Shown one piece after another: positions 7,601 to 44,411 of a stretch of DNA of 64,000 nucleotides. The translations under genes and the position numbers were made by a program. Positions within the stretch are counted from its first letter, which is position 1. Each line of letters opens with the position of its first letter. This stretch comes from Octopus sinensis (Eukaryota). The notes below the pieces were generated by a model, which worked only from the letters and a program-made list of their open reading frames with translations, was not told the DNA's origin and did no database searches. The DNA is taken from the NCBI RefSeq assembly GCF_006345805.1, contig NC_043023.1, positions 1,736,001-1,800,000 of the forward strand, given 5' to 3'.

Positions 7601-10600
7601 GATGTTGAGTGGACAGAGAGACACAGTTTGTAGATGTTGAGTGGACAGATAGACACAGTTTGTAGATGTTGAGTGGACAGAGAGACACAGTTTGTAGATG
7701 TTGAGTGGACAGAGAGACACAGTTTGTAGATGTTGAGTGGACAGAGAGACACAGTTTGTAGATGTTGAGTGGACAGATAGACACAGTGTGTAGATGTTGA
7801 GTGGACAGAGAGACACAGTTTGTAGATGTTGAGTGGACAGATGGACACAGTGTGTAGATGTTGAGTGGACAGAGAGACACAGTTTGTAGATGTTGAGTGG
7901 ACAGATAGACACAGTGTGTAGATGTTGAGTGGACAGATGGACACAGTGTGTAGATGTTGAGTGGACAGAGAGACACAGTTTGTAGATGTTGAGTGGACAG
8001 AGAGACACAGTTTGTAGATGTTGAGTGGACAGATGGACACAGTGTGTAGATGTTGAGTGGACAGAGAGACACAGTTTGTAGATGTTGAGTGGACAGATGG
8101 ACACAGTGTGTAGATGTTGAGTGGACAGATGGACACAGTGTGTAGATGTTGAGTGGACAGAGAGACACAGTTTGTAGATGTTGAGTGGACAGATGGACAC
8201 AGTGTGTAGATGTTCAGTGGAGAGAGAGACACAGTGTGTAGATGTTGAGTGGACAGATGGACACAGTGTGTAGATGTTGAGAGGAGAGATAGACACAGTG
8301 TGTAGATGTTGAGTGGACAGAGAGACAGCGTGTGTAGATGTTGAGTGGACAGAGAGTAGACACAGTGTGTAGATGTTGAGTGGACAGATGGACACAGTGT
8401 GTGATATTGAGTGGACAGAGAGACACAGTTGTAGATGTTGACTGGACAGATGGACACAGTGTGTGGATGTTGAGTAGACACAGTGTGTAGATGTTGAGTG
8501 GACAGAGAGACACAGTTTGTAGATGTTGAGTGGACAGATGGACACAGTGTGTAGATGTTGAGTGGACAGAGAGACACAGTTTGTAGATGTTGAGTGGACA
8601 GAGAGACACAGTGTGTAGATGTTGAGTGGACAGAGAGACACAGTTTGTAGATGTTGAGTGGACAGAGAGACACAGTTTGTAGATGTTGAGTGGACAGAGA
8701 GACACAGTTTGTAGATGTTGAGTGGACAGAGAGACACAGTGTAGATGTTGAGTGGACAGAGAGACACAGTGTGTAGATGTTGAGTGGACAGAGAGACACA
8801 GTTTGTAGATGTTGAGTGGACAGATAGACACAGTTTGTAGATGTTGAGTGGACAGAGAGACACAGTTTGTAGATGTTGAGTGGACAGAGAGACAGCGTGT
8901 GTAGATGTTGAGTGGACAGAGATAGACACAGTGTGTAGATGTTGAGTGGACAGATGGACACAGTGTGTAGATGTTGAGTGGACAGAGATACAGCGTGTGT
9001 AGATGTTGAGTGGACAGAGATAGACACAGTGTGTAGATGTTGAGTGGACAGATGGACACAGTGTGTAGATGTTGAGTGGACAGAGAGACACAGTTTGTAG
9101 ATGTTGAGTGGACAGATGGACACAGTGTGTGGATGTTGAGTAGACACAGTGTGTAGATGTTGAGTGGACAGAGAGACACAGTTTGTAGATGTTGAGTGGA
9201 CAGATGGACACAGTGTGTAGAGGTTGAGTGGACAGAGAGACACAGTTTGTAGATGGAGTGGACAGAGAGACACAGTTTGTAGATGTTGAGTGGACAGAGA
9301 GACACAGTGTGTAGATGTTGAGTGGACAGATAGACACAGTTTGTAGATGTTGAGTGGACAGAAGACACAGTTTGTAGATGTTGAGTGGACAGAGAGACAC
9401 AGTTTGTAGATGTTGAGTGGACAGAGAGACACAGTTTGTAGATGTTGAGTGGACAGAGAGACACAGTGTTGTAGATGTTGTGGACAGATAGACACAGTTT
9501 GTAGATGTTGAGTGGACAGAGAGACACAGTTTGTAGATGTTGAGTGGACAGAGAGACACAGTTTGTAGATGTTGAGTGGACAGAGAGACACAGTTTGTAG
9601 ATGTTGAGTGGACAGATAGACACAGTGTGTAGATGTTGAGTGGACAGAGAGACACAGTTTGTAGATGTTGAGTGGACAGATGGACACAGTGTGTAGATGT
9701 TGAGTGGACAGAGAGACACAGTTTGTAGATGTTGAGTGGACAGATAGACACAGTGTGTAGATGTTGAGTGGACAGATGGACACAGTGTGTAGATGTTGAG
9801 TGGACAGAGAGACACAGTTTGTAGATGTTGAGTGGACAGAGAGACACAGTTTGTAGATGTTGAGTGGACAGATGGACACAGTGTGTAGATGTTGAGTGGA
9901 CAGAGAGACACAGTTTGTAGATGTTGAGTGGACAGATGGACACAGTGTGTAGATGTTGAGTGGACAGATGGACACAGTTTGTAGATGTTGAGTGGACAGA
10001 TGGACACAGTGTGTAGATGTTGAGAGGAGAGATAGACACAGTGTGTAGATGTTGAGTGGACAGAGAGACAGCGTGTGTAGATGTTGAGTGGACAGAGATA
10101 GGCACAGCGTGTGTAATGTTGAGTGGACAGATGGACACAGTGTGTAGATGTTGAGTGGACAGAGAGACACAGTTTGTAGATGTTGAGTGGACAGATGGAC
10201 ACAGTGTGTAGATGTTGAGTGGAGAGAGAGACACAGTGTGTAGATGTTGAGTGGACAGATGGACACAGTGTGTAGATGTTGAGAGGAGAGATAGACACAG
10301 TGTGTAGATGTTGAGTGGACAGAGAGACAGCGTGTGTAGATGTTGAGTGGACAGAGATAGACACAGTGTGTAGATGTTGAGTGGACAGATGGACACAGTG
10401 TGTAGATGTTGAGTGGACAGAGAGACACAGTTTGTAGATGTTGAGTGGACAGATAGACACAGTGTGTAGATGTTGAGTGGACAGATGGACACAGTGTGTA
10501 GATGTTGAGTGGACAGAGGACACAGTTTGTAGATGTTGAGTGGACAGAGAGACACAGTTTGTAGATGTTGAGTGGACAGATGGACACAGTGTGTAGATGT

Positions 10601-13600
10601 TGAGTGGACAGAGAGACACAGTTTGTAGATGTTGAGTGGACAGATGGACACAGTGTGTAGATGTTGAGTGGACAGATGGACACAGTTTGTAGATGTTGAG
10701 TGGACAGATGGACAAGTGTGTAGATGTTGAGAGGAGAGATAGACACAGTGTGTAGATGTTGAGTGGACAGAGAGACAGCGTGTGTAGATGTTGAGTGGAC
10801 AGAGAGGCACAGCGTGTAGATGTTGAGTGGACAGATGGACACAGTGTGTAGATGTTGAGTGGACAGAGAGACACAGTTGTAGATGTTGAGTGGACAGATG
10901 GACACAGTGTGTAGATGTTGAGTGGAGAGAGAGACACAGTGTGTAGATGTTGAGTGGACAGATGGACACAGTGTGTAGATGTTGAGAGGAGAGATAGACA
11001 CAGTGTGTAGATGTTGAGTGGACAGAGAGACAGCGTGTGTAGATGTTGAGTGGACAGAGATAGACACAGTGTGTAGATGTTGAGTGGACAGATGGACACA
11101 GTGTGTATATGTTGAGTGGACAGAGAGACACAGTTTGTAGATGTTGACTGGACAGATGGACACAGTGTGTGGATGTTGAGTAGACACAGTGTGTAGATGT
11201 TGAGTGGACAGAGAGACACAGTTTGTAGATGTTGAGTGGACAGATGGACACAGTGTGTAGATGTTGAGTGGACAGAGAGACACAGTTTGTAGATGTTGAG
11301 TGGACAGAGAGACACAGTGTGTAGATGTTGAGTGGACAGAGAGACACAGTTTGTAGATGTTGAGTGGACAGAGAGACACAGTTTGTAGATGTTGAGTGGA
11401 CAGAGAGACACAGTTTGTAGATGTTGAGTGGACAGAGAGACACAGTTTGTAGATGTTGAGTGGACAGAGAGACACAGTTTGTAGATGTTGAGTGGACAGA
11501 GAGACACAGTTTGTAGATGTTGAGTGGACAGATAGACACAGTTTGTAGATGTTGAGTGGACAGTGAGACAGTTTGTAGATGTTGAGTGGACAGAGAGACA
11601 CAGTTTGTAGATGTGGAGTGGACAGAGAGACACAGTTTGTAGATGTTGAGTGGACAGAGAGACACAGTTTGTAGATGTTGAGTGGACAGATGGACACAGT
11701 GTGTAGATGTTGAGTGGACAGAGAGACACAGTGTGTAGATGTTGAGTGGACAGAGAGACACAGTGTGTAGATGTTGAGTGGACAGATAGACACAGTGTGT
11801 AGATGTTGAGTGGACAGATAGACACAGTTTGTAGATGTTGAGTGGACAGAGAGACACAGTTTGTAGATGTTGAGTGGACAGAGAGACACAGTTTGTAGAT
11901 GTTGAGTGGACAGAGAGACACAGTTTGTAGATGTTGAGTGGATAGAGAGACACAGTGTGTAGATGTTGAGTGGACAGATAGACACAGTGTGTAGATGTTG
12001 AGTGGACAGAGAGACACAGTGTGTAGATGTTGAGTGGACAGAGAGACACAGTGTGTAGATGTTGAGTGGACAGAGAGACACAGTGTGTAGATGTTGAGTG
12101 GACAGAGAGACACAGTTTGTAGATGTTGAGTGGACAGAGATAGACAGTTTGTAGATGTTGAGTGGACAGATGGACACAGTGTGTAGATGTTGAGTGGACA
12201 GAGATAGACACAGTTTGTAGATGTTGAGTGGACAGAGATAGACAGTGTGTAGATGTTGAGTGGACAGAGAGACACAGTTTGTAGATGTTGAGTGGACAGA
12301 TGGACAGTGCGTAGATGTTGAGTGGACAGAGATAGACACAGTGTGTAGATGTTGAGTGGACAGTGATAGACACAGTGTGTAGATGTTGAGCGGACAGAGT
12401 TAGACAGTGTGTAGATGTTGAGTGGACAGAGAGACACAGTTTGTAGATGTTGAGTGGACAGATGGACACAGTGTGTAGATGTTGAGTGGACAGAGAGACA
12501 CAGTGTGTAGATGTTGAGTGGACAGAGAGACACAGTGTGTAGATGTTGAGTGGACAGATAGACACAGTGTGTAGATGTTGAGTGGACAGATAGACACAGT
12601 GTATAGATGTTGAGTGGACAGATGAACACAGTGTGTAGATGTTGAGTGGACAGAGATAGACACAGTGTGTAGATGTTGAGTGGACAGAGATAGACAGTGT
12701 GTAGATGTTGAGTGGACAGAGAGACACAGTTTGTAGATGTTGAGTGGACAGATGGACACAGTGTGTAGATGTTGAGTGGACAGAGATAGACACCGTGTGT
12801 AGATGTTGAGTGGACAGAGATAGACAGTGTGTAGATGTTGAATGGACAGAGAGACACAGTTTGTAGATGTTGAGTGGACAGATGGACACAGTGTGTAGAT
12901 GTTGAGTGGACAGAGATAGACACAGTGTGTAGATGTTGAGTGGACAGAGATAGACACAGTGTGTAGATGTTGAGTGGACAGAGAGACACAGTTTGTAGAT
13001 GTTGAGTGGACAGATGGACACAGTGTGTAGATGTTGAGTGGACAGAGAGACACAGTGTGTAGATGTTGAGTGGACAGATGGACACAGTGTGTAGATGTTG
13101 AGTGGACAGAGATAGACACAGTGTGTAGATGTTGAGTGGACAGAGATAGACAGTGTGTAGATGTTGTGTGGACAGAGAGACACAGTGTGTAGATGTTGAG
13201 TGGACAGATGGACACAGTGTGTAGATGTTGAGTGGACAGAGATAGACACAGTGTGTAGATGTTGAGTGGACAGATAGACACTGTGTGTAGATGTTGAGTG
13301 GACAGATAGACACAGTGTGTAGATGTTGAGTGGACAGAGATAGACAGTGTGTAGATGTTGAGTGGACAGATGGACACAGTGTGTAGATGTTGAGTGGACA
13401 GAGATAGACACAGTGTGTAGATGTTGAGTGGACAGATAGACACAGTGTGTAGATGTTGAGTGGACAGATAGACACAGTGTGTAGATGTTGAGTGGACAGA
13501 GATAGACAGTGTGTAGATGTTGAGTGGACAGAGATAGACAGTGTTTAGATGTTGAGTGGACAGAGAGACACAGTGTGTAGATGTTGAGTGGACAGATGGA

Positions 13601-13975
13601 CACAGTGTGTAGATGTTGAGTGGACAGATAGACACAGTGTGTAGATGTTGAGTGGACAGAGAGACACAGTTTGTAGATGTTGAGTGGACAGATAGACACA
13701 GTGTGTAGATGTTGAGTGGACAGAGAGACACAGTGTGTAGATGTTGAGTGGACAGATGGACACAGTGTGTAGATGTTGAGTGGACAGAGATAGACACAGT
13801 GTGTAGATGTTGAGTGGACAGATAGACACAGTGTGTAGATGTTGAGTGGACAGAGAGACACAGTGTGTAGATGTTGAGTGGACAGATAGACACAGTGTGT
13901 AGATGTTAAGTGGACAGAGAGACACAGTGTGTAGATGTTGAGTGGACAGAGAGACACAGTGCGTAGATGTTGACT
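1645..13975. repeat. 32-bp minisatellite array, about 12.3 kb (roughly 385 units), consensus GATGTTGAGTGGACAGA(G/T)(A/G)GACACAGT(G/T)TGTA
   Basis: Directly visible tandem units with 30, 32 and 34 bp variants and a shortened variant (gtggatgttgagtagacacag). Unique flanks at about 1640 and 13980. Confidence 0.98.
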
Positions 13976-14589
13976 GAAAGACCAATGTATATTGATACAC
14001 TGGAGTATGAAAAGTAATTAAGAAGTTATCTAGATTCCACTGCAAAGATGAAAAATATTTCTAGACTTTCTTTAAAAAAACATATGAGCATGTTGTATAT
14101 AATTTTAATTATATACATGTACAATAGTTAATTTGTTTATAACTATATAACGAAGTGACAAGTAAAATTGAAAAGATGATCAAAAGATTTTCTGTATCTT
14201 TACTGTAAAACATTAATTTCTCTTATTTTAACTTTACATCTGAGGTATGTCAGCAACTTGCCATTTCATTTACAGCATGGCACCAAAACATCAAAAAGAT
14301 TACGAAATGCTTGTCTGCTGCATAATTAAGTCTTATACTCTATTTTTGTTCTTTCATGCATTTTTTGTTGGTATTTTTGGTACTTTTTTTTTTACTTCTG
14401 TTCAATTCCTTTTTTTTCTGAAATTCTTATCCATGCATACATTTGGCAAAAAGAAAAAAAAACAGCAAAAAAAGACAAAAAGCACAAATATTCTTCACAA
14501 CATCAAACATGAAATCAAAATGGAAGAAATTAAATTTAAAACATTAATCATAGTGATGTATTTCTTAATTTTTTATTCATTTATTTATT

Positions 14590-17122
14590 GTTCTTTTGGC
14601 TAGCACCATTTTCTTGCAATCTTTTAAAGATTTCAAACACAAACACACGCTGAAAGCCAATGAAATTTTCAAAAATTATCTTCTCGACTATATATCTTTG
14701 GTTCTGTTAGAGCCAATATTGTATTCATCATTGTCCTTCCAAATTTCAAACACGAATGTTCCTATGAAAGCCAAGAATTATTTTTAAAAATTATCTTCAT
14801 TATGGCATGTCTTTGGTTCTGTTGGTGCCAATTTATTCTTCATCATCTTTTAAAAATTTCAGACATAAATGTCCTGATAGAAGCCGTCAAAATTTTTTTA
14901 TAATTCTCTACATGATTGTATATTTTGGGTCCTACTGGTACCTATATTTGGTCCACTGTTGTCCTTTTAAAATTTCACATATGACTCTTCCTAATAGAAG
15001 CAATGAAATTCTTCAAAATAATCTTCACATTGGTGAATTTTTGGTAGGACTAACATTAATAGAAAATTTGTCATTGTTTTTGCAGAATTCCAATAGGAAT
15101 ATCTCTTTTTAAAAATTATCTTCATTATGGCATGTCTTTGATTCTGCTAGTGCCAATTTATTCTTCATCATCTTTTCAAAATTTCAAACATAAATGTCCT
15201 GATAGAAGCTGCCAAAATTTTTTTATAATTCTCTACATGATGACATATTTTTGGTTCTACTGGTACCTATATTTGGTACACAATTGTCTTTTAAAATTTC
15301 ACAAATTTCACATAGAAGCAATGAAATTCTTCAAAATAATCTTCACATTGGTGGATTTTTGGTAGGACTTAATATTAATAGTAAATTTGTCATTGTTTTT
15401 GCAGAATTCCAAAAGGAATATCTTTAAAAAACACAAAGATTTTTTAAAAATGATATTCACAATCGTATATTTCTGATTTTACAAGTACCAATATTTCGTA
15501 TATCATATTGTTGTTTCAAAATTTCAAATATGTATGTTCCAAAAGATGTAATGAAGTTCTTGAAAATAATCTTCACATTGTTCTATCTTTGGTTGCTCTC
15601 TTCTCATTGTTCTTGCAAATATTCAATATCAATATTTGTACAAAAACAATGATATTTCTAAATATAATATTCACAATGGTATATCTTAGGTTTTGCTAGT
15701 ACCAATATTTCATTTATATCATTGTATTTTCAAAATTTCAAATATGCATCTTCCAACAGAAACAATAAAATTCTTAAGAATATTCATTTTGGTGTATCTT
15801 TGCTTCTGCTACTGCCATTGTTTCATTCATCATTGTTCTTCCAAAATTTCAAATATGTAAGTCCATGCAGAAGTAATAAAATTTTCAAAAGATCATTTTC
15901 ATGATGGTGTGTCTTTGGTTCTACTGGCACCAATATTCCAAACTTGAAATATAAACATGTCTATGAACATAAACGAGATGGAATTTCAAAATGGCCAGAG
16001 CAATGGATATCTCGGGTACTTGGTTTCATTCAAGGATTAAATTTTAAACAGTGAGAAAGTGTAATTGTCATTTCAAAAGTGATTCCAATGATGGTGTCTT
16101 TGATTCTGCCAGTGACAAATATTCAATATACAAAGCAGGAATATTTTCATACAGTAACAAAATTTAAACAATGATTTTAGATAAAAATGTCTTAGGTTTT
16201 CTCAAGTTCCAATATTTTAGGCTTCAAAACTATAGACAAGATGAAATCTCAAAATGTTCTGGGCAATGGATGTCTTGGGTGGTTGGTTCCATTGGTGCCA
16301 ACAATGGTTGATTAAAACATAATAGAGATTTAGTGTCATCAGGGGCTTCAAAAGTCATTGCAATGGTGGTTCCTTTGGTTCTGCTGGTACCGAAAATTCA
16401 ATATATAAAACAGGAAATATTTCCATAGAGTAACGAAATTTAAACAGTGATCTTAGATGTCTTAGGTTTTCTCAAGTGCCAATATTCTAGGTTTCAATCG
16501 TAACTATCAACAGAGATGAAAATTCAAAATGCTCAGCGAAATGGAGGTTTTAGTGGTCGGTTCCACAAATGTCACTGTTTAACTTTAGAGTAGGTGCAAG
16601 AGGCTGTATCTGGTAAGTTTGACCATAAAACAGGTAGAATATTTGGACCAGGTATGGTCAGTTTAAACATTAATGAGTAAAAAGGTTAGAACAGCTGATT
16701 CTTTTAGAGCATGGGTATGCTAGCACCAATATTTTGCTAGCTCCTATATTCACCAATTAAAAATTGAATATTAGAAAGATTGGAAAAAAACCTTAGTGAA
16801 AGATTTTCTGGGTTTTGCTCGCATCAATATACAATGATTAACAAATGAATTTCAAAAGGGCATTCACAAAATTTAAAAATTCAAAAAGTGACCTCAGCGT
16901 GCAACCTCTTTGGTTTTGCTAGAGTCAATATTCACTCAGTGGCATTTACCATCTGCATAGCTGGATTCACTAGGTCATAAGTTATTGACCTCATTTTCCA
17001 AAGATATAGTTTACTCAAGTCGACAAGTTCCTGTGAAAGAATAACATTCGATATTGGTCTGCTGGTACGTCTTTGGATGAGTTACTCAGGTATGAAGTCT
17101 AGCTGCAACAGCTTGCTAAGTG
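14590..17122 (-). pseudogene. Degenerate array of about 22 THEG-like coding repeats (90-115 bp period), with many stops and frameshifts
   Basis: Recurrent plus-strand core tctttggttctgctagtgccaat reads TTG GCA CTA GCA GAA CCA AAG (LALAEPK) on minus. Units nearest the ORF translate as MLALSKLLQLDFIPE* and *ILTLAKPKRL, matching LALSKPLHPDFVP and LAQPKK in the intact ORF. Confidence 0.7.
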
Positions 17123-17686
17123 CTAACATCTTGGAAATCTCGGAGAAATCTTAAAGGGAAACTTTTTAGGTTGTGCTAGCTGCATTATTCGCTCGGAGGC
17201 TTTTGCAATCTGCGTACCTGGATGCACTTGGAAAGGGTTGAAGTTTATACGCCTCGTTTTCCGAATAATTGGTTTACTCAGTTCCACAATTCTTTGAGAA
17301 GGAATTACATTCAGCATCGCTCTATTAATGGGTCTTTGGACTGGTTGTATAGGTACAAAATCTGGATGTAGTGGCTTGCTAAGTGCTAACTTCTCCATCC
17401 TTGAACTTAGTGGAATATGATAGGGATGGCGCTGAGAATTTAAGGAGTCCTCTCTTTCATATTTGGGAGTTATCTTTCGTTCTAATGGAATGGCAAGTTC
17501 AGAGATTCGATTTGATGCAACTGCAGTTTTAGCTTTGCGACTTATTTTGATAGGAAGTATTATTGGTGCTTGAAAATCTTTGGGTGGTCGCTTTGGGAGG
17601 GCCAGGAAATCCAACCTCGAGCTACACTTCTTAGGGATCCTTTTGACTGGTTTTGATACATACGTACCTCTGGTTGGAATAAACAT
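17123..17686 (-). CDS. THEG: THEG/SPMAP2-like (testicular haploid expressed repeat) protein; single or terminal coding exon, 187 aa as called
   Basis: Five S-x-R-x-x-x-L-(A/S)-x-(P/S) units at about 35-aa spacing: SSRLDFLALPK, SNRISELAIP, SSRMEKLALSK, SQRIVELSKP, SERIMQLAQPK. This is the THEG repeat pattern as recalled. Possible acceptor ttccaaccAG ends at 17670, so the true start may lie in an upstream exon. Confidence 0.8.
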   Translation of the reverse strand: MFIPTRGTYVSKPVKRIPKKCSSRLDFLALPKRPPKDFQAPIILPIKISRKAKTAVASNRISELAIPLERKITPKYEREDSLNSQRHPYHIPLSSRMEKLALSKPLHPDFVPIQPVQRPINRAMLNVIPSQRIVELSKPIIRKTRRINFNPFQVHPGTQIAKASERIMQLAQPKKFPFKISPRFPRC

Positions 17687-17793
17687 TTCAAGTCAATAAT
17701 TGGATTCATTCTCCACACACACAAAAATACAATTATACATACATACATGCATATATATATATATATATAATATATATATATATATATAATATA

Positions 17794-17826
<33 letters not shown>

Positions 17827-17829
17827 ATA

Positions 17830-19018
17830 TACACACACATACACACAAGAAACTCCAAAGTCCACTAACGGCTAACCCCAACCCTAGTAAATTAATTCAA
17901 CATAAGCCCCAGCTACATGCGTGTAAACCCAACACACCAACTGAACCTCATAACAAAACAAACCCTCATAACTACAACTATAGTACCATTGCTACCACCC
18001 AAACTTAAATTTACCACAACACCCACATATACTTCCTGCCATAATAGAGAATACCATAGAGGTTACCAATGGACACAATAATTATCATACCATATCAACC
18101 AACAACACCATCCTCAACCCCTTAGCACCAACTACAATGAAGAACCAAACGCCAATTCCAATCCCCTCACAAGCTCATCCAGAACACCCCCTACAAACCT
18201 ATGCAGCTTCAGGCGCCCAACCTCTTGCCCTTTAGATAACCACTGTCTCACTAAAAACATGGTTTATAAGTACGCAGTATCAACCAACAATTGTAACTAC
18301 ATTTACACCGGCTCATGTAGCACCACCTTCAAAGCTAGGGTGAGTAGTCACTACTCAAATAGCTTCAAATCCCATACAAAATCTAGGCACAGGAGTGGCT
18401 GTGTGGTAAGTAGCTTGCTTACCAACCACATGGTTCCGGGTTCAGTCCTACTGCGTGGTACCTTGGGCAAGTGTCTTCTACTATAGCCTCGGGCTGACCA
18501 AAGCCTTGTGAGTGGATTTGGTAGACGAAAACTGAAAGAAGCCCATCGTATATATGTATATATATATATGTGTGTGTGCGTGTATGTTTGTGTGTCTGTG
18601 TTTGTCCACCCAACATCACTTGACAACTGATGCTGGTGTGTTTATGTCCCCGTCACTCAGCGGTTCAGCAAAAGAGACCGATAGAATAAGTACTGGGCTT
18701 ACAAAGAATAAGTCCTGAGGTCGAGTTGCTCGACTAAAGGCGGTGCTCCAGCATGGCCACAGTCAACTGACTGAAACAAGTAACAGAGTAAAAGAGTACG
18801 TCGTTATCTCAACTTATCAGCAAACTAAGGCTTAATTCAACCCCTTTCACTCTCAAATGGTCCATACCCACGCCAAATCTTACAGTGGATATGACAATAA
18901 GAGTGATCTCAGCATAGCTAAGGTCATGGCTATTTTGAAATCCACGGACTGTCCCAATGAATGCAGCAGTATAATATTCAGCTGCAAACATCAGGTCCTA
19001 AATCTATTATCAAAATAT
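17830..19018 (+). mobile_element. Penelope-like element fragment (post-RT linker plus GIY-YIG endonuclease), decayed and interrupted by a SINE
   Basis: Translates ...CPLDNHCLTKNMVYKYAVSTNNCNYIYTGSCSTTFKARVSSHYSNSFKSHTKS|TSLSQLISKLRLNSTPFTLKWSI...DLSIAKVMAIL...CKHQ across the SINE at 18385-18797. This matches the PLE VY-YIG-FK-R-H-SF-T.LS-IKW-CRH pattern. Confidence 0.8.
18385..18797 (+). mobile_element. Full-length family A SINE (tRNA-derived head, CORE-like segment, (AAGAGT)n tail; probably an octopus OR-type SINE)
   Basis: A-box-like tggctgtgtggt, B-box-like ggttcagtcc, gtggtaccttgggcaagt CORE-like block, internal (TA/TG)n, tail aacagagtaaaagagta. Removing it restores the PLE frame. Confidence 0.9.
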
Positions 19019-19438
19019 AGGCGCAGGAGTGGCTGTGTGGTAAGTAGCTTGCTAACCAACCACATGGTTCCGGGTTCAGTCCCACTGCGTGACACCTTGG
19101 GCATGTGTCTTCTCCTATAGCCCCGGGCCGACCAATGCCTTGTGAGTGGATTTGGTAGATGGAAACTGAAAGAAGCCCGTCGTATATATATGTGTATATA
19201 TATATGTGTGAGCGTGTATGTTTGTGTGTCTGTGTTTGTCCCCCTAGCATTGCTTGACAACCGATGCTGGTTTGTTTACGTCCCCGTTACTTAGCGGTTC
19301 GGCAAAAGAGACCGATAGAATAAGTACTGGGCTTACAAAAGAATAAATCCCGGGGTCGAGTTGCTCGATTAAAGGCGGTGCTCCAGCATGGCCGCAGTCA
19401 AAATGACTGAAACAAGTGAAAAGAGTAAAAAGAGTATA
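19019..19438 (+). mobile_element. Full-length family A SINE
   Basis: aggcgcaggagtggctgtgtggtaag ... gaaaagagtaaaaagagta. Confidence 0.9.
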
Positions 19439-19682
19439 ATTACAACCCCACCCTGCACTTGTCTCCCCATAACTCTCATATATTCTTTTTCCCACTCATC
19501 CACCCTCACAACAACTGCATATTAAATCAACAATATTTTTTCTCCCTTTTTCATTTCTTAATCGTCAATTATAATTTTCTTTCCCTATTTTTACTTACTA
19601 CCTAAAATATTCTTCTCTTTATATTTCTACACCCACTGCCTCTTCCACCCTCCACACATAAATGTACAAAAATATACTCCCT

Positions 19683-20087
19683 TTACTCTTTTAATTGTTT
19701 CAGTCAGTTGACTGCAGCCATGCTGGAGCACCGCCTTTAGTCGATCAAATCGACACTGGGACTTATTCTTTGTAAGCCTAGTACTTATTCTATCGGTCTC
19801 TTTTGCCGAACCGCTAAGTGACGGGGACGTAAACACATCAGCATCGTTTGTCAAGCAATGCTAGGGGGACAAACACACACACACATGTATACACATATAT
19901 ATATATATATATATACATATATACGACAGGCTTCTTTCAGTTTCCGTCTACCAAATCGACTCACAAGGCATTGGTCGGCCCGGGGCTATAGCAGAAGACA
20001 CTTGCCCAAGATGCCACGCAGTGGGACTGAACTGAGAACCATGTCGTTGGTTAGCAAGCTACTTACCACACAGCCGCTCCTGCGCCT
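19683..20087 (-). mobile_element. Full-length family A SINE
   Basis: Reverse complement of the 19019-19438 copy; its 5' end abuts (TA)n. Confidence 0.9.
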
Positions 20088-20224
20088 ATATATATATATA
20101 TATATATACATTAGATACACAGGACGAGTAAATTGTTAAACATAATGAGATTTGTATTATATCACAATACTATAGATGGTTCAATTAAAAATAAATAAAA
20201 TAATTATAAATAGATCGTTGCCAG

Positions 20225-20605
20225 AGCAACAAGCTGGCTTCCATGCCGATGGCACGTAAAAAAGCACCATTCGAGTGTGATCATTACCTGCGTCGCCTTA
20301 CTTGCACTTGTGCTGGTGGCACGTGAAAAGACATTTGAGCGAGGTCATTGCCAGTGCCACTGGACCGGCTCCTGTGCAGGCGGCACATAAAAAACACCAT
20401 TTGAGCATGGCCGTTGCCAGTACAGCCTGACTTGCCCTCATGCTAGTGGCACATAAAAGCACCCACTACACTCTCAGAGTGGTTGGCATTAGGAAGGGCA
20501 TCCAGCTGTAGAAACTCTGCCAGATCAAGATTGGAGTCTGGTGCAGCCATCTGGTTTGCCAGACCTCAGTCAAATCGTCCAACCCATGCCAGCACGGAAA
20601 GCAGA
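20225..20605 (+). mobile_element. Family C non-autonomous retroelement (about 60-bp tandem modules plus conserved 3' body)
   Basis: Repeated ggtggcacgtaaaaagcacc modules, then cccactacactc..gagtggttggcattaggaagggcatccagctgtagaaac...ccaacccatgc. Confidence 0.8.
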
Positions 20606-21045
20606 GTTTGTATATATATATATAGAGGCTAATACTGAAGAATGAGTGCTCAACACTGCATTGGTGGATAAATATTCTTTATTTGTGAGTCAACAAAGCT
20701 ACCATCAGTTTCATGTAAAGAGTAATCTCTCAACAACTGTCAAGCCTGTAACACGGGAATTTTGGCACTAGTCTCCATCTTGGATGAGAATACATGAAAC
20801 CATTGGTAACCTTGTTAACCCTCAAATAAAGCTTATATTTACACACACACACACACACACAGAGGAATATTCTTGAAGAAATCCAGTAGCATGTGCATCC
20901 TTTATAATGACCTCAGGTAGCCAGCAACTGTGGACAAGATTTACACAACATTCTATAAGTTTTTTATTTTTACCCAAATATGGTTATATCTTTGGTAGAT
21001 GGAATATAACTATATATATTTGGCAGATGGAAACTGAAAGAAGCT

Positions 21046-21090
<45 letters not shown>

Positions 21091-21423
21091 ATATATATCA
21101 GTCTTCCTTCAGTTTCCATCTGCTGAATCCACTCACAAGGTTTTAGACAATTTGGGGCAATAATAGAAGACACTTGCCTGAGGTACCCCACAGTGGAACT
21201 AAAACCAGTACTTTGTGGTTGATAAGCAAACTTCTTAACTATACAACCATGAAAAATCTCTAGTGGGTTCACAGAATTTTGGGCCAAACCCGATAAGACT
21301 AAGTCCTTCACAACAATACATTTTTCTCCCCTACAGAAACATGAACGGTTAAATCAGAAGGATATACATATATATATATATTGTCAGTGTATCATATTCG
21401 AAAAAGAAGCATACTCTAAACTG

Positions 21424-23262
21424 AGCAGTTAAGTCTATGTCTGGCCATAGAGTGACCAATGGTTTTGCATCCATAAAGGGCTTAGCCCCATGGACGACTT
21501 GTTAGATCCTAATGGTAGAGGGCATATACCTCTTCAAACTGGACGTAGAAATTCATTATGGTCTGTTAGTTATTAGTAAAGAAAAAATATGTCTTATGGG
21601 TCAGCAAGGACAAGATATCTCCCTTAGACCAGTTCAGTTGGCAGTCCAAGTGGCGAATGGGGAACCTCCGCCCTCAGGTTGCTTCTAGCCCAAAGGGCTT
21701 TTTTCTTGTTCAAATCAATGAATGGCAAACCCCATCCTTGCATGAGGTAGCATTTGAAGAAGAAGCAGAGACTATAAATATTGTGTCGGGAATTTAACAG
21801 TAATTCTGGAAAAACAGTGGTCTTTGAAGTTACTTGCTCACTCTGCTATGCAAAGCTTGCATCATCCGTTCCAGGATACTGGCTGCTCTATGGTCCTCCA
21901 TTTAATTTCCTATGGAGTTCCTTCATCCTTAGGGTGCAACATGTGGCCAACCTGGGACGTGATGTAATGTCTTTCTGGCAGCTTAAAAGAGGACTTGTGG
22001 TTGTACAGGTGCTACTTAAAGGCAGTTCTGGTTGACGTGACAGATCTCCAAACTTGACTTCTACTTCTGCTCACACCTCTGGTGCCTCTTCTATTGGGCC
22101 CCAGACCTGGTTTTGTTGTTGCTGTTGCTGCTGCTGTTATTGGAGTTGTTATCCATGCTTTTATTATGGAGCATCGGCCTGGTGATAGCGCTGTGGCTAT
22201 TGTCATTGTGGTGGTCATACCTGGACTTAGTGCTGATGTTGCTGTCAGTGATGGTGTTCTGGCTGCCATCATTCGTAATATTGGTAAAAAAGGCAGCGAG
22301 CTGGCGGAAATGTTAGCACGCCGGACGAAATGCTTTGTGATATTTCACCTGCCACTGCGTTCTGAGTTCAAATTCCACCGAGGTCAACTTTGCCTTTCAT
22401 CCTTTCGGGGTTGATAAATTAAGTACCATTTACGCACTGGGGTCAAAATAATCGACTTAATCCATTTGTCTGTTCTGGTTTGTCCTCTCTGTGTTTAGCC
22501 CCTTGTGGGTAGTAAAGAAATAGGTATTTCGTTTGCCACTACGTTCCGAGTTCAAATTCTGCCGAGGTCGACTTTGGCTTTCATCCTTTCGGGGTCGATA
22601 AATTAAGTACCAGTTACGCACTGGGGTCGAAATAATCGACTTAATTCATTTGTCTGTTCTGGTTTGTCCTCTCTGTGTTTAGCCCCTTGTGGGTAGTAAA
22701 GAAATAGATATTTCGATTGCCGCTACGTTCTGAGTTCAAATTCCGCCGAGGTCGACTTTGGCTTTCATCCTTTCGGGGTCGATAAATTAAGTACCAGTTA
22801 CACACTGGGGTCGAAATAATCGACTTAATTCATTTGTCTGTTCTGGTTTGTCCTCTCTGTGTTTAGCCCCTTGTGGGTAGTAAAGAAATAGGTATTTCGT
22901 TTGCAGCTACGTTCTGAGTTCAAATTCCGCCGAGGTCGACTTTGGCTTTCATCCTTTCGGGGTCGATAAATTAAGTACCAGTTATGCACTAAGGTCGGTG
23001 TAATCACCTGAATCCGTTTGTCTGTCCTTGTTTGTCCCCTCTATGTTTAGCCCCTTGTAGGCAATAAATAAATAATCATTGGTAATATTGGGCATCGGAC
23101 TGGTAGCTTCACTGGTGCTACAGGTGTTGGCATGTTCTAGTTCCATTTTCAAGAGGTATATGCCCTCCAGCATAAGGGCCTGACTAGTCATCCAAAGGGC
23201 TAAATGCCTTATTGATGCAAAACCATTGGTTACTCTTTGACCAGAAATATACTTAACTGCTT
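21424..23262 (-). mobile_element. Penelope-like element remnant bounded by about 130-bp inverted repeats, interrupted by a SINE B tetramer
   Basis: Minus translation RTAFK*HLYNHKSSFKLPERHYITSQVGHMLHPKDEGTP*EIKWRTIEQPVSWNG*CKLCIAE matches a GIY-YIG C-terminal region. 21424-21550 is an imperfect inverted copy of 23127-23262 (gcagttaagt..tctgg..gagt.accaatggttttgcatc..agggcatatacctctt). Confidence 0.75.
22285..23074 (+). mobile_element. Family B SINE as a head-to-tail tetramer (about 184-bp period) with a 17-bp target-site duplication
   Basis: Four units ttc.gagttcaaatt..gccgaggtcgacttt..ctttcatcctttcggggtcgataaattaagtacca...gggtagtaaagaaata. Flanks atcattcgtaatattgg (22268-22284) and atcattggtaatattgg (23075-23091). 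Confidence 0.9.
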
Positions 23263-23273
23263 AAATATATACG

Positions 23274-23321
<48 letters not shown>

Positions 23322-23329
23322 CATCCATA

Positions 23330-24939
23330 CAGGCTATCCCAGAAGTAACTATTTCAGTGAAATGGGACAATTCTTTTAAAAAACTCACTTTTATTTATGT
23401 TTATCATACTTAATATGTGTTAAAAGTGTATAAATTTTTTATTTTGTTCAGAATGTAATTTTTATAATTATTTTTATAATTTTATTTTCATTCATGTTGG
23501 ATCCCGCTTATCTGTCCGCAACAGCTTTTCATCAATTTGGTTGCAATCATTTTCTCTACCTCCGTCCCAAAGACGGAGCAGCAATTTAACTGAACTTAAC
23601 CCATTCATTACTATATTTCTGACCAAAATACACCCCTTATGTGTTTCAATTATTTTCTAACGTAATCATAAATTTAGTCTGGTTTCATTAACAACTATAA
23701 CTTTTTTATTTATCAATATATTAATCTGATTTTTGGAAGATAATTTAATGAAATATTCTCAACCAATTCTATACTATAATTTTTGTCACTCTAATTGCAG
23801 GTAGATACAGGTAAATTCAACAAAATATAAAATTATTAAAATTTTGTTCAAACATCGCTATAGAAAATGGGTAATTAGCTAATATTCAATTGGGTATACA
23901 ACAAAATTTTACAATAGAATTTGTTAGTCTGGGTAACTTTCTGATACCCATAATAATATTTATGGCAAAATAGTCTTAATTTCATTTAAGGTTGTGGGAA
24001 ACCACAAACTATCCTTTCTTTCGCTTTGTTTAAATTCAGCGTAACGGTTCGTTTCCGCCGTAATGATTTCAAATAGGCTCATTCGAAAAAGTAAAAAGAA
24101 ATAGTCTAAGGCTTTACTCTTCTGGGAAAGTCTGTGGCTTGGTCCAGTTTCTTCAGAAAATTCACCGAAAGAAACAGTTTTTAAATTTTCACTCCATTCA
24201 GGAGCCAATTCATTTTCTTTATCGCTGTCGGAGATCTCGGATTCACTGTTTTCACTTTTGGAAAATGAAACATCGGATTCATTATCAAATACCTCGTGCT
24301 TTTTTTTTTTTCAGTCATAGAGTTAGATTTATGAAGGCCTTCAGTAGAAAATCCTTCGAATTCTGACTCGCTGCTTGATATAATGAAATTCGTATCCATT
24401 TTTTGTCAGAATTACAAATTTTGAAAACACAATAGGAACAAATTTCGGAAAAAAATCTCCCAAAATTCACAGAATTAAAATTACACTTCGATTTTTGTAC
24501 AAAACTGTAGTTGAACTGTTTACGAAGTATAATACGTGTTTTCACGAATGTACTAAAGAGATTTGCTCTGATATTCTCATTTAAATATCAATAGGTAAAT
24601 ACGGGCAGGTTTGGGCGGTTTGGTCACATTAACCAAAATTTTTTTCGGGTGGCTTTGGGCAGGTTGGTAACGAAAGGGTTAAAGAATGCATTCAGTTAGA
24701 AGTGCAAGAGCTAACTCCTGAAATGCTTCAAAATGTGTTTTGCAATGCTATGGGTAGATTTGAAATATGCAGGGATACAGACGGGGTGCATGTTGAAAAA
24801 TTTCAATAAAGTTATGATCTATGACTTACAAATCTATTTGTTTTAGTAACATAATTTAATAACAAACGTAAAATTCTGTCACCTTTTTAAAAATTTGTCC
24901 AGTCTCATTGAAATAGATAGATAACACTGAGATAGCCTG
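23330..24939 (+). mobile_element. Internally deleted Tc1/mariner-superfamily DNA transposon
   Basis: TA|CAGGCTATCCCAG ... CTGAGATAGCCTG|TA inverted termini. Removing the inner element gives SNLTELKECIQLEVQELTPEMLQNVFCNAMGRFEICRDTDGVHVEKFQ*, a Tc1-like transposase C-terminus. Confidence 0.8.
23600..24678 (-). mobile_element. piggyBac-like element (1079 bp, deleted) inserted at TTAA
   Basis: TTAA|CCCATTCATTAC ... GTAACGAAAGGG|TTAA. Minus-strand remnant FSEETGPSHRLSQKSKALDYFFLLFRMSLFEIITAETNRYAE..WFPTTLNEIK matches the piggyBac transposase N-terminal ETNRYA block. Confidence 0.85.
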
Positions 24940-24968
24940 TATGTATATATGTGTGTGTGTGTGTGTGT

Positions 24969-25020
<52 letters not shown>

Positions 25021-25089
25021 AAGATATATATATATATATATATATATATGAATATATGTATAATATATATATGTATATATATATATGTA

Positions 25090-25305
25090 TCAGCCTCGTC
25101 TGGCACCTGTGTCGGTGGCACATAAAAAGCACCCACTACACTCACGGACTGGTTGGCGTTAGGAAGGGCATCCAGCTGTAGAAACACTGCCAGATCTGAC
25201 TGGCCTGGTGCAGCCTTCGGGCTTCTCAGACCCCAGTTGAACTGTCCAACCCATGCTAGCATGGTAAGCGGACGTTAAACGATGATGATGATGATGATGT
25301 ATATG
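25090..25305 (+). mobile_element. Family C element, 5'-truncated, (GAT)n tail
   Basis: ggttggcgttaggaagggcatccagctgtagaaac...ggacgttaaacgatgatgatg. Confidence 0.85.
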
Positions 25306-25389
25306 TATATATAGTGTGTGTGTATATATATGTTTATGTATATATATTATATATGTATATATGTGTGTGTGTATATATATATAAATATG

Positions 25390-25491
<102 letters not shown>

Positions 25492-26094
25492 GTATATGTA
25501 TATATATATATGTATATATACCAGAAACATTTCCAAAGACTCCAGATTTTTGAAGCCACACTCTAAAAGGTCAGGTGACTTACAATAATGTTCTCTTTAT
25601 TTCTTTTATTTCCTTTCCGGCCATACACAAATAGTCATCTCAGAATCGTATTTCTATTTTTTCCTAGAAACTAATCTTCTGTTATAAATTTAAAACAAAA
25701 ATACAAAAAAAAAAAAAAGAGAGAGAGAGAGAGAAAGAGTTGATTAAGAATTTGAGACAAATTTTGATTTCAATTAATTTCTGTATAAATTCCTTTATCG
25801 GGGTTTTTATTTCTTGGTAAATGATTTTAGTTTTGTTATTCCAACTGAGTGTTTAAAATGATGAACCTTTGAAAGCAACAATATTTTATCTGGTAATTTA
25901 TGGGAATTATAAGTTTTTCACCCTTTTCATACCAACCTGATTCCATTCCACAAAAATTCCTGTTTTCCTTCAACAGCAAAATGGCAACAAAAGGTTTGAA
26001 ATCAAAATTTAATGTTCATTTATGTTTCCAAACAACAAACTTAGGAGACCTATTGAGTCAAGTACATGAACATCGAAATAAATATCAATGGAAA

Positions 26095-27288: not shown

Positions 27289-27434
27289 ATTCCATTGAGA
27301 CCAACCTGCCAGAGAGTAACCAGGGTTCCATGATACAAGCTTCCTGTTTTAAAGAGATCCAAATTAAAACCTTCCATCAAAATCTCAGGTTAATTTATAT
27401 TCTAAGAACCAGCTTGATAACGGCAAAGCGATTT

Positions 27435-27643
27435 TACTCTTTTACTTGTTTCAGTCATTTGACTGCAGCCATGCTGGAGCACCACCTTTAGTTGAGCAAA
27501 TCGACCCCAGGACTTATTCTTTGTAAGCCTAGTACTTATTCTATCAGTCTCTTTTGCTGAACTGCTAAGTTACGGGGACATAAACATACCACCATCAGTT
27601 GTCAAGCGACGTTGGGAGGACAAACACAGACACACAAACATAT

Positions 27644-27684
<41 letters not shown>

Positions 27685-27848
27685 CGATGAGCTTCTTTCA
27701 GTTTCCGTCTGCCAAATCCACTTACAAAGCTTTGGTCAGCCTGAGGCTATAGTAGAAGACACTTGCCCAAGGCGCCACACAGTGGGACTGAACCCGGAAC
27801 CATGTGGTTCATAAGCAAGCTACTTACCACACAGCCACTCCTAAGCCT
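27435..27848 (-). mobile_element. Full-length family A SINE
   Basis: tactcttttacttgtttcagtcatttgactgcagccatgctggagcacc ... accacacagccactcct. Confidence 0.9.
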
Positions 27849-28269
27849 ATAGCTACTTACTTACACAGCCACTCCTATGCCTATATGGTAAATATCTTTT
27901 TAACTTACGTTTTATTTTTGGTGCGGCCCCCTAAGAAGATCCCGGTTTATCATGTCTAGATTTAAAAAACATTGAGCGTGCAGTCCTCAAGCATCCTTCA
28001 AATGGTCCACCCTCTATAAATATAACAAATTTTTTTTTTGATCAACTTGTGTTATACTTTTGTTGCTGCAGCCCCCTAATTTTCTTTTACAAACTTGTGT
28101 TTTATTTTTGTTGGTGCACCCCCTTAAAAAAATCCAGATTTTTTATTGAGCCCAGACATTAAAAGCATTGAGCATGCAAACCTCAAGTATCCTTCCAGTG
28201 GCCCTCAACAGTACTCCTCCTTTAAATCTAATGAATTTCTGTTCTATATTTAAGAGACGAGGAATTATT

Positions 28270-31418: not shown

Positions 31419-31468
31419 TCGGTTGAGAATGAAACAAAAAATAAGGTATATGTATAAATATTTAATTA

Positions 31469-33332: not shown

Positions 33333-33372
<40 letters not shown>

Positions 33373-34383: not shown

Positions 34384-34400
34384 ATATATATATATATATA

Positions 34401-44369: not shown

Positions 44370-44409
<40 letters not shown>

Positions 44410-44411
<2 letters not shown>

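What the first reader, a model, noticed from the sequence alone, without database searches (positions are those of the whole stretch)
14590..17686. THEG/SPMAP2-like ORF that dissolves into a 2.5-kb fossil of about 22 more repeats
An intact five-repeat THEG-type ORF is followed without a break by about 22 units spaced 90-115 bp apart. Their best-kept core still encodes L-A-x-(A/E/K)-(E/K)-P-K (for example LTLAKPKRL near 16910, LMRAKPRK near 16810, LALTEPKI near 14700), but they are full of stops and indels. THEG-repeat proteins are sperm or ciliary microtubule-associated (recalled knowledge). Inference: this locus once encoded a much longer repeat protein of about 27 units and was truncated, or the coding repeat kept expanding as non-coding DNA. 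No ORF track or TE library would flag this region.
Basis: partly seen in the sequence, partly recalled or inferred. Interest (0 to 1): 0.72.

Follow-up and report, generated by a model that had tools for sequence, protein, structure and literature searches.

The report
Sperm-gene repeat that became non-coding satellite
An intact octopus-type sperm microtubule gene (THEG/SPMAP2 family, five repeats, 195 aa) is followed by about 2.5 kb of decayed copies of its own last repeats; these most likely multiplied as non-coding DNA after the stop codon and are not the wreck of a much longer protein.

Summary
The minus-strand ORF 17686..17123 is a THEG-family protein (Pfam PF14912, E 8e-30) with five repeat cores 102-108 nt apart. 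It is exon 2 of a two-exon gene. Exon 1 lies at 25624..25584, and the spliced product is 195 aa, the same length as its closest relative, O. bimaculoides XP_014779166.1.

Directly after the stop come about 23-26 head-to-tail units of 89-116 bp on the same strand, ending at about 14596.
- The first three units (17131..16869) are a clear dead copy of repeats 3-5 (DNA E 1e-19; protein E 1e-12; 2 stops).
- The rest are linked to THEG only at the DNA level. They resemble the last unit of that dead copy. A profile built only from the 12 distal units also hits the last repeat, tail and stop of THEG paralogue exons in O. bimaculoides (best two of five E 0.002 and 0.009).
- Pfam THEG does not recognise them.

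The "27-repeat protein" reading is not supported:
- the units share stops;
- unit lengths are not multiples of 3;
- nearly all units descend from one repeat type;
- 99 of 128 family representatives end within 15 residues of their last core.

Best reading: a coding repeat seeded a non-coding minisatellite with 274-bp and 326-bp higher-order periods. This is an ordinary mechanism in a tidy example. Orthologous loci could not be fetched.

The parts
25584..25624 (-). Coding exon 1 of the THEG-like gene. It starts at ATG 25624-25622, encodes [13 protein letters not shown] plus 2 bases of a split codon, and is followed by the donor GTAAGT at 25583.
   Evidence: tblastn of the P0001 N-terminus: 12/14 identical, E 2.4e-4 for the 21-residue N-terminal query. 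Sequence read. Splicing to 17669 restores the frame and gives 195 aa.
17670..25583 (-). Intron of about 7.9 kb (GT...AG). It contains SINE-like repeats and a 184-bp tandem array.
   Evidence: Donor and acceptor read. Repeats seen.
17123..17669 (-). Exon 2 coding part, with five intact THEG repeats and the stop TAG at 17125-17123. Cores lie at 17614-17591, 17506-17483, 17398-17375, 17290-17267 and 17188-17165.
   Evidence: Pfam PF14912 E 8.1e-30. 60% identity to O. bimaculoides XP_014779166.1. Core positions. PDB matches 8otz_Dn and 8snb_8A.
16869..17131 (-). Fossil block M2 (units 6-8): a dead tandem copy of repeats 3-5. It sits one frame off the ORF, has 2 in-frame stops and a 2-codon deletion, and has cores at about 17129, 17027 and 16931.
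   Evidence: blastn 68.5% over 235 bp, E 1.3e-19. nhmmer E 7.4e-27. tblastn against P0001 E 1.2e-12. Pfam THEG reaches only 16.7 bits, E 0.01, below the cutoff.
16566..16868 (-). Strongly decayed units 9-12. Recognisable cores are ILMRAKPR (16830) and ILVLAYPC (16732, doubled by a local 17-bp duplication). Two further units are inferred from spacing only.
   Evidence: Weight matrix 25.8 and 20.0 bits. Local-alignment scores of 26 and 24 against unit 8, where background has mean 14.4, sd 2.6 and 99th percentile 22. TRF period 17 at 16718-16750.
15969..16565 (-). Middle zone: about 2.2 copies of a 274-bp higher-order repeat, each made of three roughly 90-bp units. Cores lie at 16485, 16396, 16304, 16215 and 16121.
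   Evidence: Self-blastn 16565-16232 against 16291-15969, 74%, E 5e-56. The frameshift/stop 'IL.LEKT*' is shared by 16485 and 16215. The distal profile hits 16393 (E 0.0055) and 16127 (E 0.015).
14652..15959 (-). Distal zone: 12 contiguous units of 94-116 bp, GC 28%. They are organised as a 326-bp higher-order repeat; the youngest two copies (14781-15423) match at 91%.
Evidence: TRF period 325 and 111. Self-blastn offsets 115/228/326. Alignment and unit lengths.
14596..14651 (-). Last, partial unit (core KMVLAKRT at 14612), marking the end of the array. It is followed at once by two AATAAA motifs at 14589-14584 and 14577-14572.
   Evidence: Weight matrix 11.5 bits. nhmmer E 0.039. AATAAA positions. 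Use as a polyadenylation site is not shown.

Best explanation
The locus holds an intact two-exon gene for a 195-aa THEG/SPMAP2-family protein with five repeats. By family membership this is a filament-like protein of the sperm axoneme's doublet microtubules.

The gene's internal 102-108-nt repeats made its 3' end prone to misaligned recombination or replication slippage. The proposed history has four steps.
1. The last repeat, with its short C-terminal tail, was copied in tandem beyond the stop codon.
2. Those copies, being untranslated, decayed: they accumulated stops and indels and drifted to 28% GC.
3. The decayed copies went on amplifying as a non-coding minisatellite. This produced three-unit higher-order repeats of 274 bp and 326 bp, the youngest copies still 91% alike.
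4. A 263-bp block holding repeats 3-5 was copied next to the gene (17131..16869). It is also dead. The present stop codon lies exactly at that junction.

Shown: the gene, the homology chain, the lesions shared between copies, and the family-wide C-terminal end. Inferred: the order of the steps and the recombination mechanism. No function is proposed for the array; it is best seen as a neutral by-product.
For: Gene and family.

Chain of descent: repeat 5 matches unit 8 (nhmmer E 2.7e-9), repeat 4 matches unit 7 (6.1e-7), and repeat 3 matches unit 6 (8.1e-5). Unit 8 then links to the downstream units: 10 of 23 score above the 99th percentile of 1722 background segments from the same window, where 0.23 are expected. 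The other repeat types give 0-3.

Independent cross-species check: a profile built only from eight distal units hits, in a 28.6-kb O. bimaculoides locus, the last-repeat core plus tail plus stop of all five paralogous THEG exons. E values are 0.002, 0.009, 0.25, 0.61 and 0.65, and these are five of the seven best hits. The best alignment runs 16 nt past the stop. Reversed-sequence decoys give a best E of 3.1 and 6.5.

Non-coding amplification:
- Stops and frameshifts are shared between copies: I*VPVEPK at 15272 and I*VPVGPK at 14947, IL.LEKT* at 16485/16215, and a stop 8 codons after the core in six distal units.
- Distal unit lengths of 94-116 nt fall equally into the three mod-3 classes.
- Conservation is spread over the whole unit, not focused on the core.

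Stop position is ancestral: P0001 ends at the same point. Among 141 representatives the median length is 251 aa, and 99 of 128 end within 15 residues of the last core. Both PDB chains end 3 and 13 residues after it.

GC falls with distance from the gene: 0.41, 0.395, 0.337, 0.279.

No other copy of the unit exists in the 64-kb window.
Against: - Pfam THEG does not recognise units 9-31, even when each is translated in its core frame and the pieces are concatenated. Their THEG origin therefore rests on DNA similarity of about 30-60 nt per unit plus position, strand and phase.
- Individual E values linking the distal units to unit 8 are modest: 0.006 in the first, non-circular pass.
- The M1/M2 junction is one base away from an in-frame read-through, so units 6-8 may once have been translated.
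- M1 against M2 gives dN/dS 0.47, with differences of 22/22/28 across the three codon positions. This does not discriminate between the readings.
- No orthologous locus, transcript data or rest of the genome could be examined. A genome-wide satellite of this unit, or use as a 3'UTR, is not excluded.
Confidence: 0.75

Rival explanations
1. Short former extension. The 263-bp copy (units 6-8) was originally in frame, giving an 8-repeat protein. A small deletion at the junction (17129-17131) later restored the 5-repeat length. Only the units beyond it multiplied as non-coding DNA.
For: M2 keeps a single frame over 77 codons with only 2 stops and one 2-codon gap. Relative to the parent sequence the junction differs by 1 nt plus 6 nt, so one base separates it from an in-frame read (read). 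At sites where the window's M1 differs from P0001, M2 keeps 10 residues shared with P0001 against 6 shared with M1. The copy is therefore old.
Against: P0001 ends at the same position, so any longer form was lost before the two genes diverged. The family-wide habit of ending just after the last core argues that the present end is the original one. Codon-position differences between M1 and M2 are nearly flat at 22/22/28.
Confidence: 0.15
2. Truncated giant. The locus once encoded about 27-31 THEG repeats in one ORF, and a frameshift after repeat 5 killed the rest.
For: The series is continuous, same-strand and in phase. The best-kept part is the THEG signature L-A-x-P-K.
Against: - The five intact repeats are undetectably similar to each other at the DNA level (scores 11-21, at background). 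The downstream units are mutually detectable and all of the last-repeat type.
- Copies share disabling lesions, and unit lengths are not multiples of 3.
- The distal units carry the C-terminal tail. The best hit to a paralogue runs 16 nt beyond that paralogue's stop, so they may also carry the start of the 3' flank.
- Only 6 of 141 family representatives exceed 500 aa. In the longest (1246 aa) the best THEG match covers only the C-terminal ~150 residues.
Confidence: 0.04
3. Unrelated satellite or transposable-element array that happens to abut the gene. On this reading the core resemblance is chance or low-complexity bias.
For: Pfam finds no THEG signal in units 9-31. The window is full of other tandem arrays with 32-, 119-, 184-, 263- and 300-bp units. 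The distal zone is AT-rich.
Against: The array starts without a gap at a proven THEG fossil, on the same strand and with the same period. The distal-only profile picks out THEG last repeats in another species' locus, while decoys give nothing. There is no second copy elsewhere in the window. There are no Rfam hits, no transposable-element protein, and no plus-strand coding signal.
Confidence: 0.04
4. Functional non-coding array. The units lie in a long 3'UTR, or are alternative terminal exons, and are kept by selection.
For: Two AATAAA motifs sit exactly at the distal end of the array. In O. bimaculoides a paralogous THEG locus uses five tandem alternative terminal exons.
Against: No unit has an open frame with THEG similarity. 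Decay increases smoothly with distance. Conservation within the array is explained by recent duplication and not by a conserved core. No expression data are available.
Confidence: 0.02

Closest known systems
THEG / SPMAP2 and THEGL / SPMAP2L family (Pfam PF14912); closest member O. bimaculoides XP_014779166.1
   Same: Strong Pfam match. Five repeats with the R-I-x-x-L-A-x-P-K core about 36 residues apart. The protein ends a few residues after the last core. It has the same 195-aa length and the same two-exon N-terminus as XP_014779166.1. It matches by sequence the THEG-like chains in PDB entries 8otz and 8snb.
   Different: Only 60% identical to the closest known protein. The tail after the last core (11 residues) is longer than in the five O. 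bimaculoides paralogues (4 residues). Expression and location were not tested.
Partial tandem gene duplication leaving an unprocessed pseudogene fragment
   Same: Block 17131..16869 is a head-to-tail copy of the last 263 bp of the coding exon, with stops and a frame offset.
   Different: The copy lies inside the same transcription unit's 3' flank and abuts the stop codon. It is followed by many further rounds of copying.
Minisatellite / satellite DNA with higher-order repeat structure
   Same: Head-to-tail units of 94-116 bp, three-unit higher-order periods of 274 and 326 bp, young copies at 91% and older ones at about 70%, and AT-rich composition.
   Different: The seed is a protein-coding repeat of the neighbouring gene. 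The review read here (PMC5615363) names rDNA spacers and transposable elements as examples of satellite seeds. The array is only 2.5 kb at one known site; genome-wide abundance is unknown.
O. bimaculoides paralogous THEG cluster (GCA_001194135.2, CM046624.1:9143476-9172064; locus L002)
   Same: The 3' THEG exon was duplicated in tandem. The last-repeat DNA (..ATATTGCAACTTGCAAAACCAAAG..) is recognisably like the window's distal units.
   Different: There, whole exons were duplicated and all five remain open (178 codons each) and annotated as alternative products. No decayed array follows them.

Membership tests
THEG / SPMAP2 (PF14912): the ORF | Pfam THEG model above its gathering score | tested here: met
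   103.4 bits against a cutoff of 27, E 8.1e-30, 3 matched stretches.
THEG / SPMAP2 (PF14912): the ORF | Several repeats with the (S)xR-I/L-x-x-L-A-x-P-K core at a regular spacing of about 35 residues | tested here: met
   Five cores, 36/36/36/34 codons apart.
THEG / SPMAP2 (PF14912): the ORF | Protein ends shortly after the last core | tested here: met
   11 residues after the core. Family median is 6, and 99 of 128 representatives are at 15 or fewer.
THEG / SPMAP2 (PF14912): the ORF | Relatedness to proteins resolved on sperm doublet microtubules | tested here: met
   phmmer against PDB: 8otz_Dn E 7.6e-7, 8snb_8A E 2.6e-6. The location of SPMAP2/SPMAP2L on mammalian sperm doublet microtubules is stated in PMC7617938.
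THEG / SPMAP2 (PF14912): the ORF | Testis or spermatid expression and axonemal location | not testable with these tools
   No expression or proteome data are available for this genome.
THEG repeat (protein sense): fossil units 6-8 | Pfam THEG above its gathering score | tested here: not met
   16.7 bits, E 0.01, and 12.6 bits in the raw frame. Homology to repeats 3-5 is nevertheless clear.
THEG repeat (protein sense): units 9-31 | Any Pfam THEG signal in a raw or core-frame translation | tested here: not met
   No family reported at E up to 10 in three raw frames or in the core-frame concatenation. These units are DNA descendants of a THEG repeat, not THEG repeats.
Descent from the THEG last repeat (DNA sense): units 9-31 | Significant DNA-profile similarity to bona fide THEG last repeats, on the same strand and in phase | tested here: met
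   The distal-only profile hits unit 8 at E 0.006 and O. bimaculoides paralogue exon ends at E 0.002 and 0.009. Decoys give E of 3 or more. 10 of 23 units exceed the 99th background percentile against unit 8.
Minisatellite / higher-order tandem repeat | Head-to-tail units with a nested longer period | tested here: met
   Periods of about 110, 274 and 326 bp.
Dispersed transposable element or genome-wide satellite | Further copies away from the gene | tested here: inconclusive
   None in the other 61 kb of the window and none in L002 outside the THEG exons. The rest of the genome could not be searched. Metagenome scans found nothing.

The most novel reading that the evidence does not exclude
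The array is not junk. It would be part of a long 3'UTR ending at the AATAAA pair near 14580. There its ~25 copies of one 25-nt core could act as a repeated binding platform controlling storage or translation of this spermatid mRNA. Alternatively it could serve as raw material from which new terminal THEG exons are recruited, as the five-exon paralogue cluster in O. bimaculoides hints.
Probability: 0.06. Interest if true: 0.6.

Novelty: new member of a known kind. Interest (0 to 1): 0.3.

Why it matters
The locus gives a clean, datable example of how a protein-coding internal repeat can spill over its own stop codon and seed a non-coding tandem array with higher-order structure. All intermediate stages lie side by side: an intact repeat, a readable fossil, bare cores, and a re-amplified AT-rich satellite.

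The fossil copy also preserves ancestral residues of a fast-evolving sperm protein: 10 states shared with the O. bimaculoides protein that the living copy has lost.

For annotation, the finding shows three things. The 187-aa ORF is exon 2 of a 195-aa gene. The 2.5 kb behind it should be masked as gene-derived tandem repeat, not called as pseudogene exons. The array does not change what is known about THEG function.

Tried and rejected
1. Pfam THEG on X-masked raw frames of 14500-17122 and on core-frame concatenated units. Only the first fossil copy scores, and below threshold. Protein profiles therefore cannot carry the claim for the distal units.

2. Single-sequence nhmmer from unit 8 or repeat 5 to the distal units. 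Nothing significant. Only the multi-unit profile and background-calibrated local scores bridge the gap.

3. Fetching orthologous loci.
- No contig is on record for the window protein or for P0001.
- The P0001 cluster has a single member without a contig.
- The metagenome scan by protein found no relative.
- A scan with a degenerate KLALSKPLHPDFVP pattern found nothing.
- Only a paralogous O. bimaculoides locus (L002) was obtained.

4. The idea that the present 11-residue tail arose when a 1-nt frameshift bypassed an ancestral stop (CTTTAAG shared with the paralogues). Local alignment of the tail to paralogue 3' flanks is not significant (p 0.04-0.78), so the idea was dropped.

5. dN/dS between the living and dead copy (0.47). 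It does not tell whether the copy was ever under selection.

6. Plus-strand ORFs of 60-101 aa inside the array. No family match above threshold (weak sub-threshold hits only), so they are artefacts of AT-rich repeats.

7. Rfam over 13900-26000. No match.

8. The unrelated THEG locus L001, from a eukaryotic contig in a metagenome. It shows no similarity to the unit profile.
Full report
**What is in the sequence.**
The minus strand carries an ORF from 17686 to 17123 (187 aa). It matches Pfam THEG (PF14912) at E 8.1e-30 and 103.4 bits. Its five repeat cores (LDFLALPK, ISELAIPL, MEKLALSK, IVELSKPI, IMQLAQPK) start at 17614, 17506, 17398, 17290 and 17188. They are 108, 108, 108 and 102 nt apart, all multiples of three.

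The closest protein in 5.8 billion is Octopus bimaculoides XP_014779166.1 (P0001, 195 aa, 60% identity). Its first 14 residues, MAGKEIKEKKRTIL, are missing from the ORF. They are found 12/14 identical at 25624..25583 on the same strand. That segment is followed by a GTAAGT donor, and an AG acceptor sits at 17671-17670. Splicing 25624..25584 to 17669..17123 keeps the frame and gives 195 aa, the same length as P0001.

By sequence, the protein matches the THEG-like chains in PDB entries 8otz and 8snb (E 7.6e-7 and 2.6e-6). SPMAP2 and SPMAP2L are described as proteins of mammalian sperm doublet microtubules (PMC7617938).

**The array behind the stop.**
A 25-nt core, ATATTGGTACTAGCAGAACCAAAGA (I-L-v-L-A-e-P-K), with up to 8 mismatches occurs 15 times on the minus strand between 17188 and 14719. 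It occurs once elsewhere in both strands of the window. A weight matrix built from these hits finds 21 sites in the region against 15 in the other ~125 kb, with spacings of 89-116 nt (partly circular, because the matrix came from hits in the region). The array has three zones.

1. *First fossil block, 17131..16869.* This is an unambiguous copy of the last 263 bp of the coding exon, that is, repeats 3-5.
   - blastn gives 68.5% over 235 bp, E 1.3e-19.
   - nhmmer gives E 7.4e-27.
   - tblastn against P0001 gives E 1.2e-12, with two stops and a two-codon gap.
   - The block is one frame off the ORF, and the gene's TAG lies exactly at the junction.
2. *Proximal and middle zones, 16868..15969.* These hold strongly decayed units and then 2.2 copies of a 274-bp three-unit repeat (74% identity, E 5e-56).
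3. *Distal zone, 15959..14652.* This is 12 contiguous units of 94-116 bp. Every unit scores nhmmer E 1e-10 to 1e-24 after one iteration. They are organised as a 326-bp three-unit repeat whose youngest copies are 91% alike. A partial unit ends the array at 14596.

In total, 23 downstream units are supported and about 3 more are inferred from spacing.

**Are the distal units really THEG-derived?**
At the protein-profile level the answer is no. Pfam THEG finds nothing in the raw frames beyond the first fossil block (E 0.19). It also finds nothing when units 9-31 are each translated in their core frame and concatenated. The first fossil block alone reaches 16.7 bits, below the cutoff of 27.

At the DNA level the answer is yes, along a chain.
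- Repeat 5 matches unit 8 at 16931 (E 2.7e-9).
- Unit 8 matches the downstream units. Ten of 23 score above the 99th percentile of 1722 background segments from the same window, where 0.23 are expected. The other repeat types give 0-3.
- A profile built from eight distal units alone hits unit 8 at E 0.006 in its first, non-circular pass.

The strongest evidence is independent of the window. A paralogous THEG cluster from O. bimaculoides (L002, GCA_001194135.2 CM046624.1:9143476-9172064) has five open terminal exons. The distal-only profile hits exactly the last-repeat core of all five. E values are 0.002, 0.009, 0.25, 0.61 and 0.65, and these are five of the seven best hits in the locus. The best alignment runs through the C-terminal tail, the stop and 16 nt beyond it. 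Reversed decoys give E of 3 or more.

The four codons after the core are also shared. The window unit at 15936 reads ACACACCATCAT and a paralogue reads ACACACCACCTT (K-T-H-H-L-stop).

**Long dead protein or non-coding expansion?**
Five observations favour expansion after the stop.
- *One repeat type.* The five living repeats are so old that they are not detectably similar to each other as DNA (scores 11-21 against a background of 14 +/- 2). The dead units are mutually detectable and, apart from units 6 and 7 of the first fossil block, all of the last-repeat type. A truncated old array should look like the living repeats.
- *Shared lesions.* Copies share disabling lesions, so they were already dead when copied. 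Examples are I*VPVEPK at 15272 and I*VPVGPK at 14947, the IL.LEKT* frameshift at 16485 and 16215, and a stop eight codons after the core in six distal units.
- *Unit lengths.* Distal unit lengths fall 4/4/4 into the three mod-3 classes. Conservation is spread along the whole unit and is not focused on the core.
- *Terminal tail.* The units carry the gene's terminal tail. The alignment to the paralogue continues past its stop codon, so the units may also include the start of the 3' flank.
- *Ancestral stop position.* P0001 ends at the same place (..RFAR against ..RFPRC). Among 141 representatives from 1.84 billion proteins the median length is 251 aa and only six exceed 500 aa. Of the 128 whose match reaches the last repeat, 99 end within 15 residues of it.

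GC content falls steadily with distance from the gene: 0.41, 0.395, 0.337, 0.279.

**What stays open.**
The 263-bp copy may once have been translated. Relative to its parent, the junction differs by 1 nt plus 6 nt, so one base separates it from an in-frame read. dN/dS between the living and dead copy is 0.47, with differences of 22/22/28 by codon position. This does not decide the matter.

The copy is old. There are 22 sites where the window's living copy differs from P0001. The fossil agrees with P0001 at 10 of them and with the living copy at 6. The duplication therefore predates most of the divergence of the two genes. If a longer form existed, it was lost before that divergence.

Whether P0001 is the orthologue or a recent paralogue is also unknown. 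SINE-like repeats in the window are 79-90% identical to a copy in L002, so the source is a close relative of O. bimaculoides.

No orthologous locus could be fetched, the rest of the genome could not be searched, and no transcript data are at hand. Genome-wide spread of the unit and 3'UTR status therefore remain untested. Two AATAAA motifs lie right at the array's end (14589, 14577).

**Mechanism, with basis.**
- *Shown:* an intact THEG gene; a graded series of its own 3' repeats behind the stop; amplification of already-dead units into higher-order repeats.
- *Inferred:* misaligned recombination or replication slippage between the gene's internal repeats produced copies beyond the stop. Being untranslated, these were invisible to selection. 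They drifted to AT and kept amplifying by unequal exchange. Later copies inserted next to the gene pushed older ones outward.

The same window holds several other young tandem arrays (32-bp x 384, 119-bp x 9, 263/300-bp x 11). Tandem amplification is therefore common in this stretch of genome.

**Comparison and verdict.**
The gene is a new member of the THEG/SPMAP2 family. The array is a gene-derived minisatellite with higher-order structure, and its first block is an unprocessed partial pseudogene. A satellite-DNA review names rDNA spacers and transposable elements as examples of seeds (PMC5615363). A protein-coding internal repeat as the seed, with every stage preserved in 3 kb, is a neat but not surprising case.

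- Observation: confirmed.
- Interpretation: partly supported (second alternative).
- Interest: about 0.3.

Noticed in passing
window 1674-13973: A 12.3-kb minisatellite of a 32-bp unit (GTAGATGTTGAGTGGACAGATAGACACAGTGT, about 384 copies, 90% matches). It creates a spurious 4134-aa ORF on the minus strand. It begins only about 620 bp beyond the end of the THEG-derived array and shows no similarity to it.
   Followed up: partly
L002 (O. bimaculoides GCA_001194135.2, CM046624.1:9143476-9172064), 10516-22315: A paralogous THEG cluster. Five tandem, open copies of a 178-codon terminal exon end at 12240, 16355, 17984, 20586 and 22315. Four of them are annotated as alternative products (195-201 aa) with a common start coordinate; a short upstream exon (10516-10584) was located for the 201-aa product. 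Whole-exon tandem duplication of THEG 3' ends therefore recurs in octopus.
   Followed up: partly
window 18384-18793, 19017-19438, 19672-20089, 27432-27850, 33133-33565, 33961-34385, 44396-44829, 47070-47435, 47953-48307, 56144-56572 and others: A dispersed repeat of about 420 bp (SINE-like; it translates to ..FPSTKSTHKALVGP..) in at least 13 copies. They are 79-90% identical to L002 7362-7777, which points to a source species close to O. bimaculoides.
   Followed up: partly
window 52500-55357: Young tandem arrays with 263-bp and 300-bp units (about 11 copies, 96-97% matches), apparently built from part of the same SINE-like element.
   Followed up: no
window 46028-47193: A run of 100 N (assembly gap, 46028-46127) directly abuts a 119-bp x 8.9 tandem array at 97% identity (46128-47193). 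The array is probably longer than assembled.
   Followed up: no
window 22350-23074 and 42354-42721: Tandem copies of a 183/184-bp unit (3.9 and 2.0 copies, 92% and 86% matches). The first set lies inside the THEG intron.
   Followed up: no
window 30268-32254, minus strand: Transposable-element remnants: a reverse-transcriptase ORF of 389 aa (PF00078, E 5.5e-32) and a mariner-type transposase fragment (PF01359, E 1.2e-16).
   Followed up: partly
window 16718-16750: A local 17-bp duplication doubles the core of unit 10 (GCTAGCAAAATATTGGTGCTAGCATACC). It is a small-scale slippage event inside the fossil array.
   Followed up: no
window 17131-16896 compared with P0001: The dead copy keeps 10 residues shared with the O. 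bimaculoides protein that the window's living copy has since replaced (for example S, L, Y, N, A, V, T, L, K, L). It can serve as an outgroup for reconstructing how this fast-evolving sperm protein changed.
   Followed up: partly
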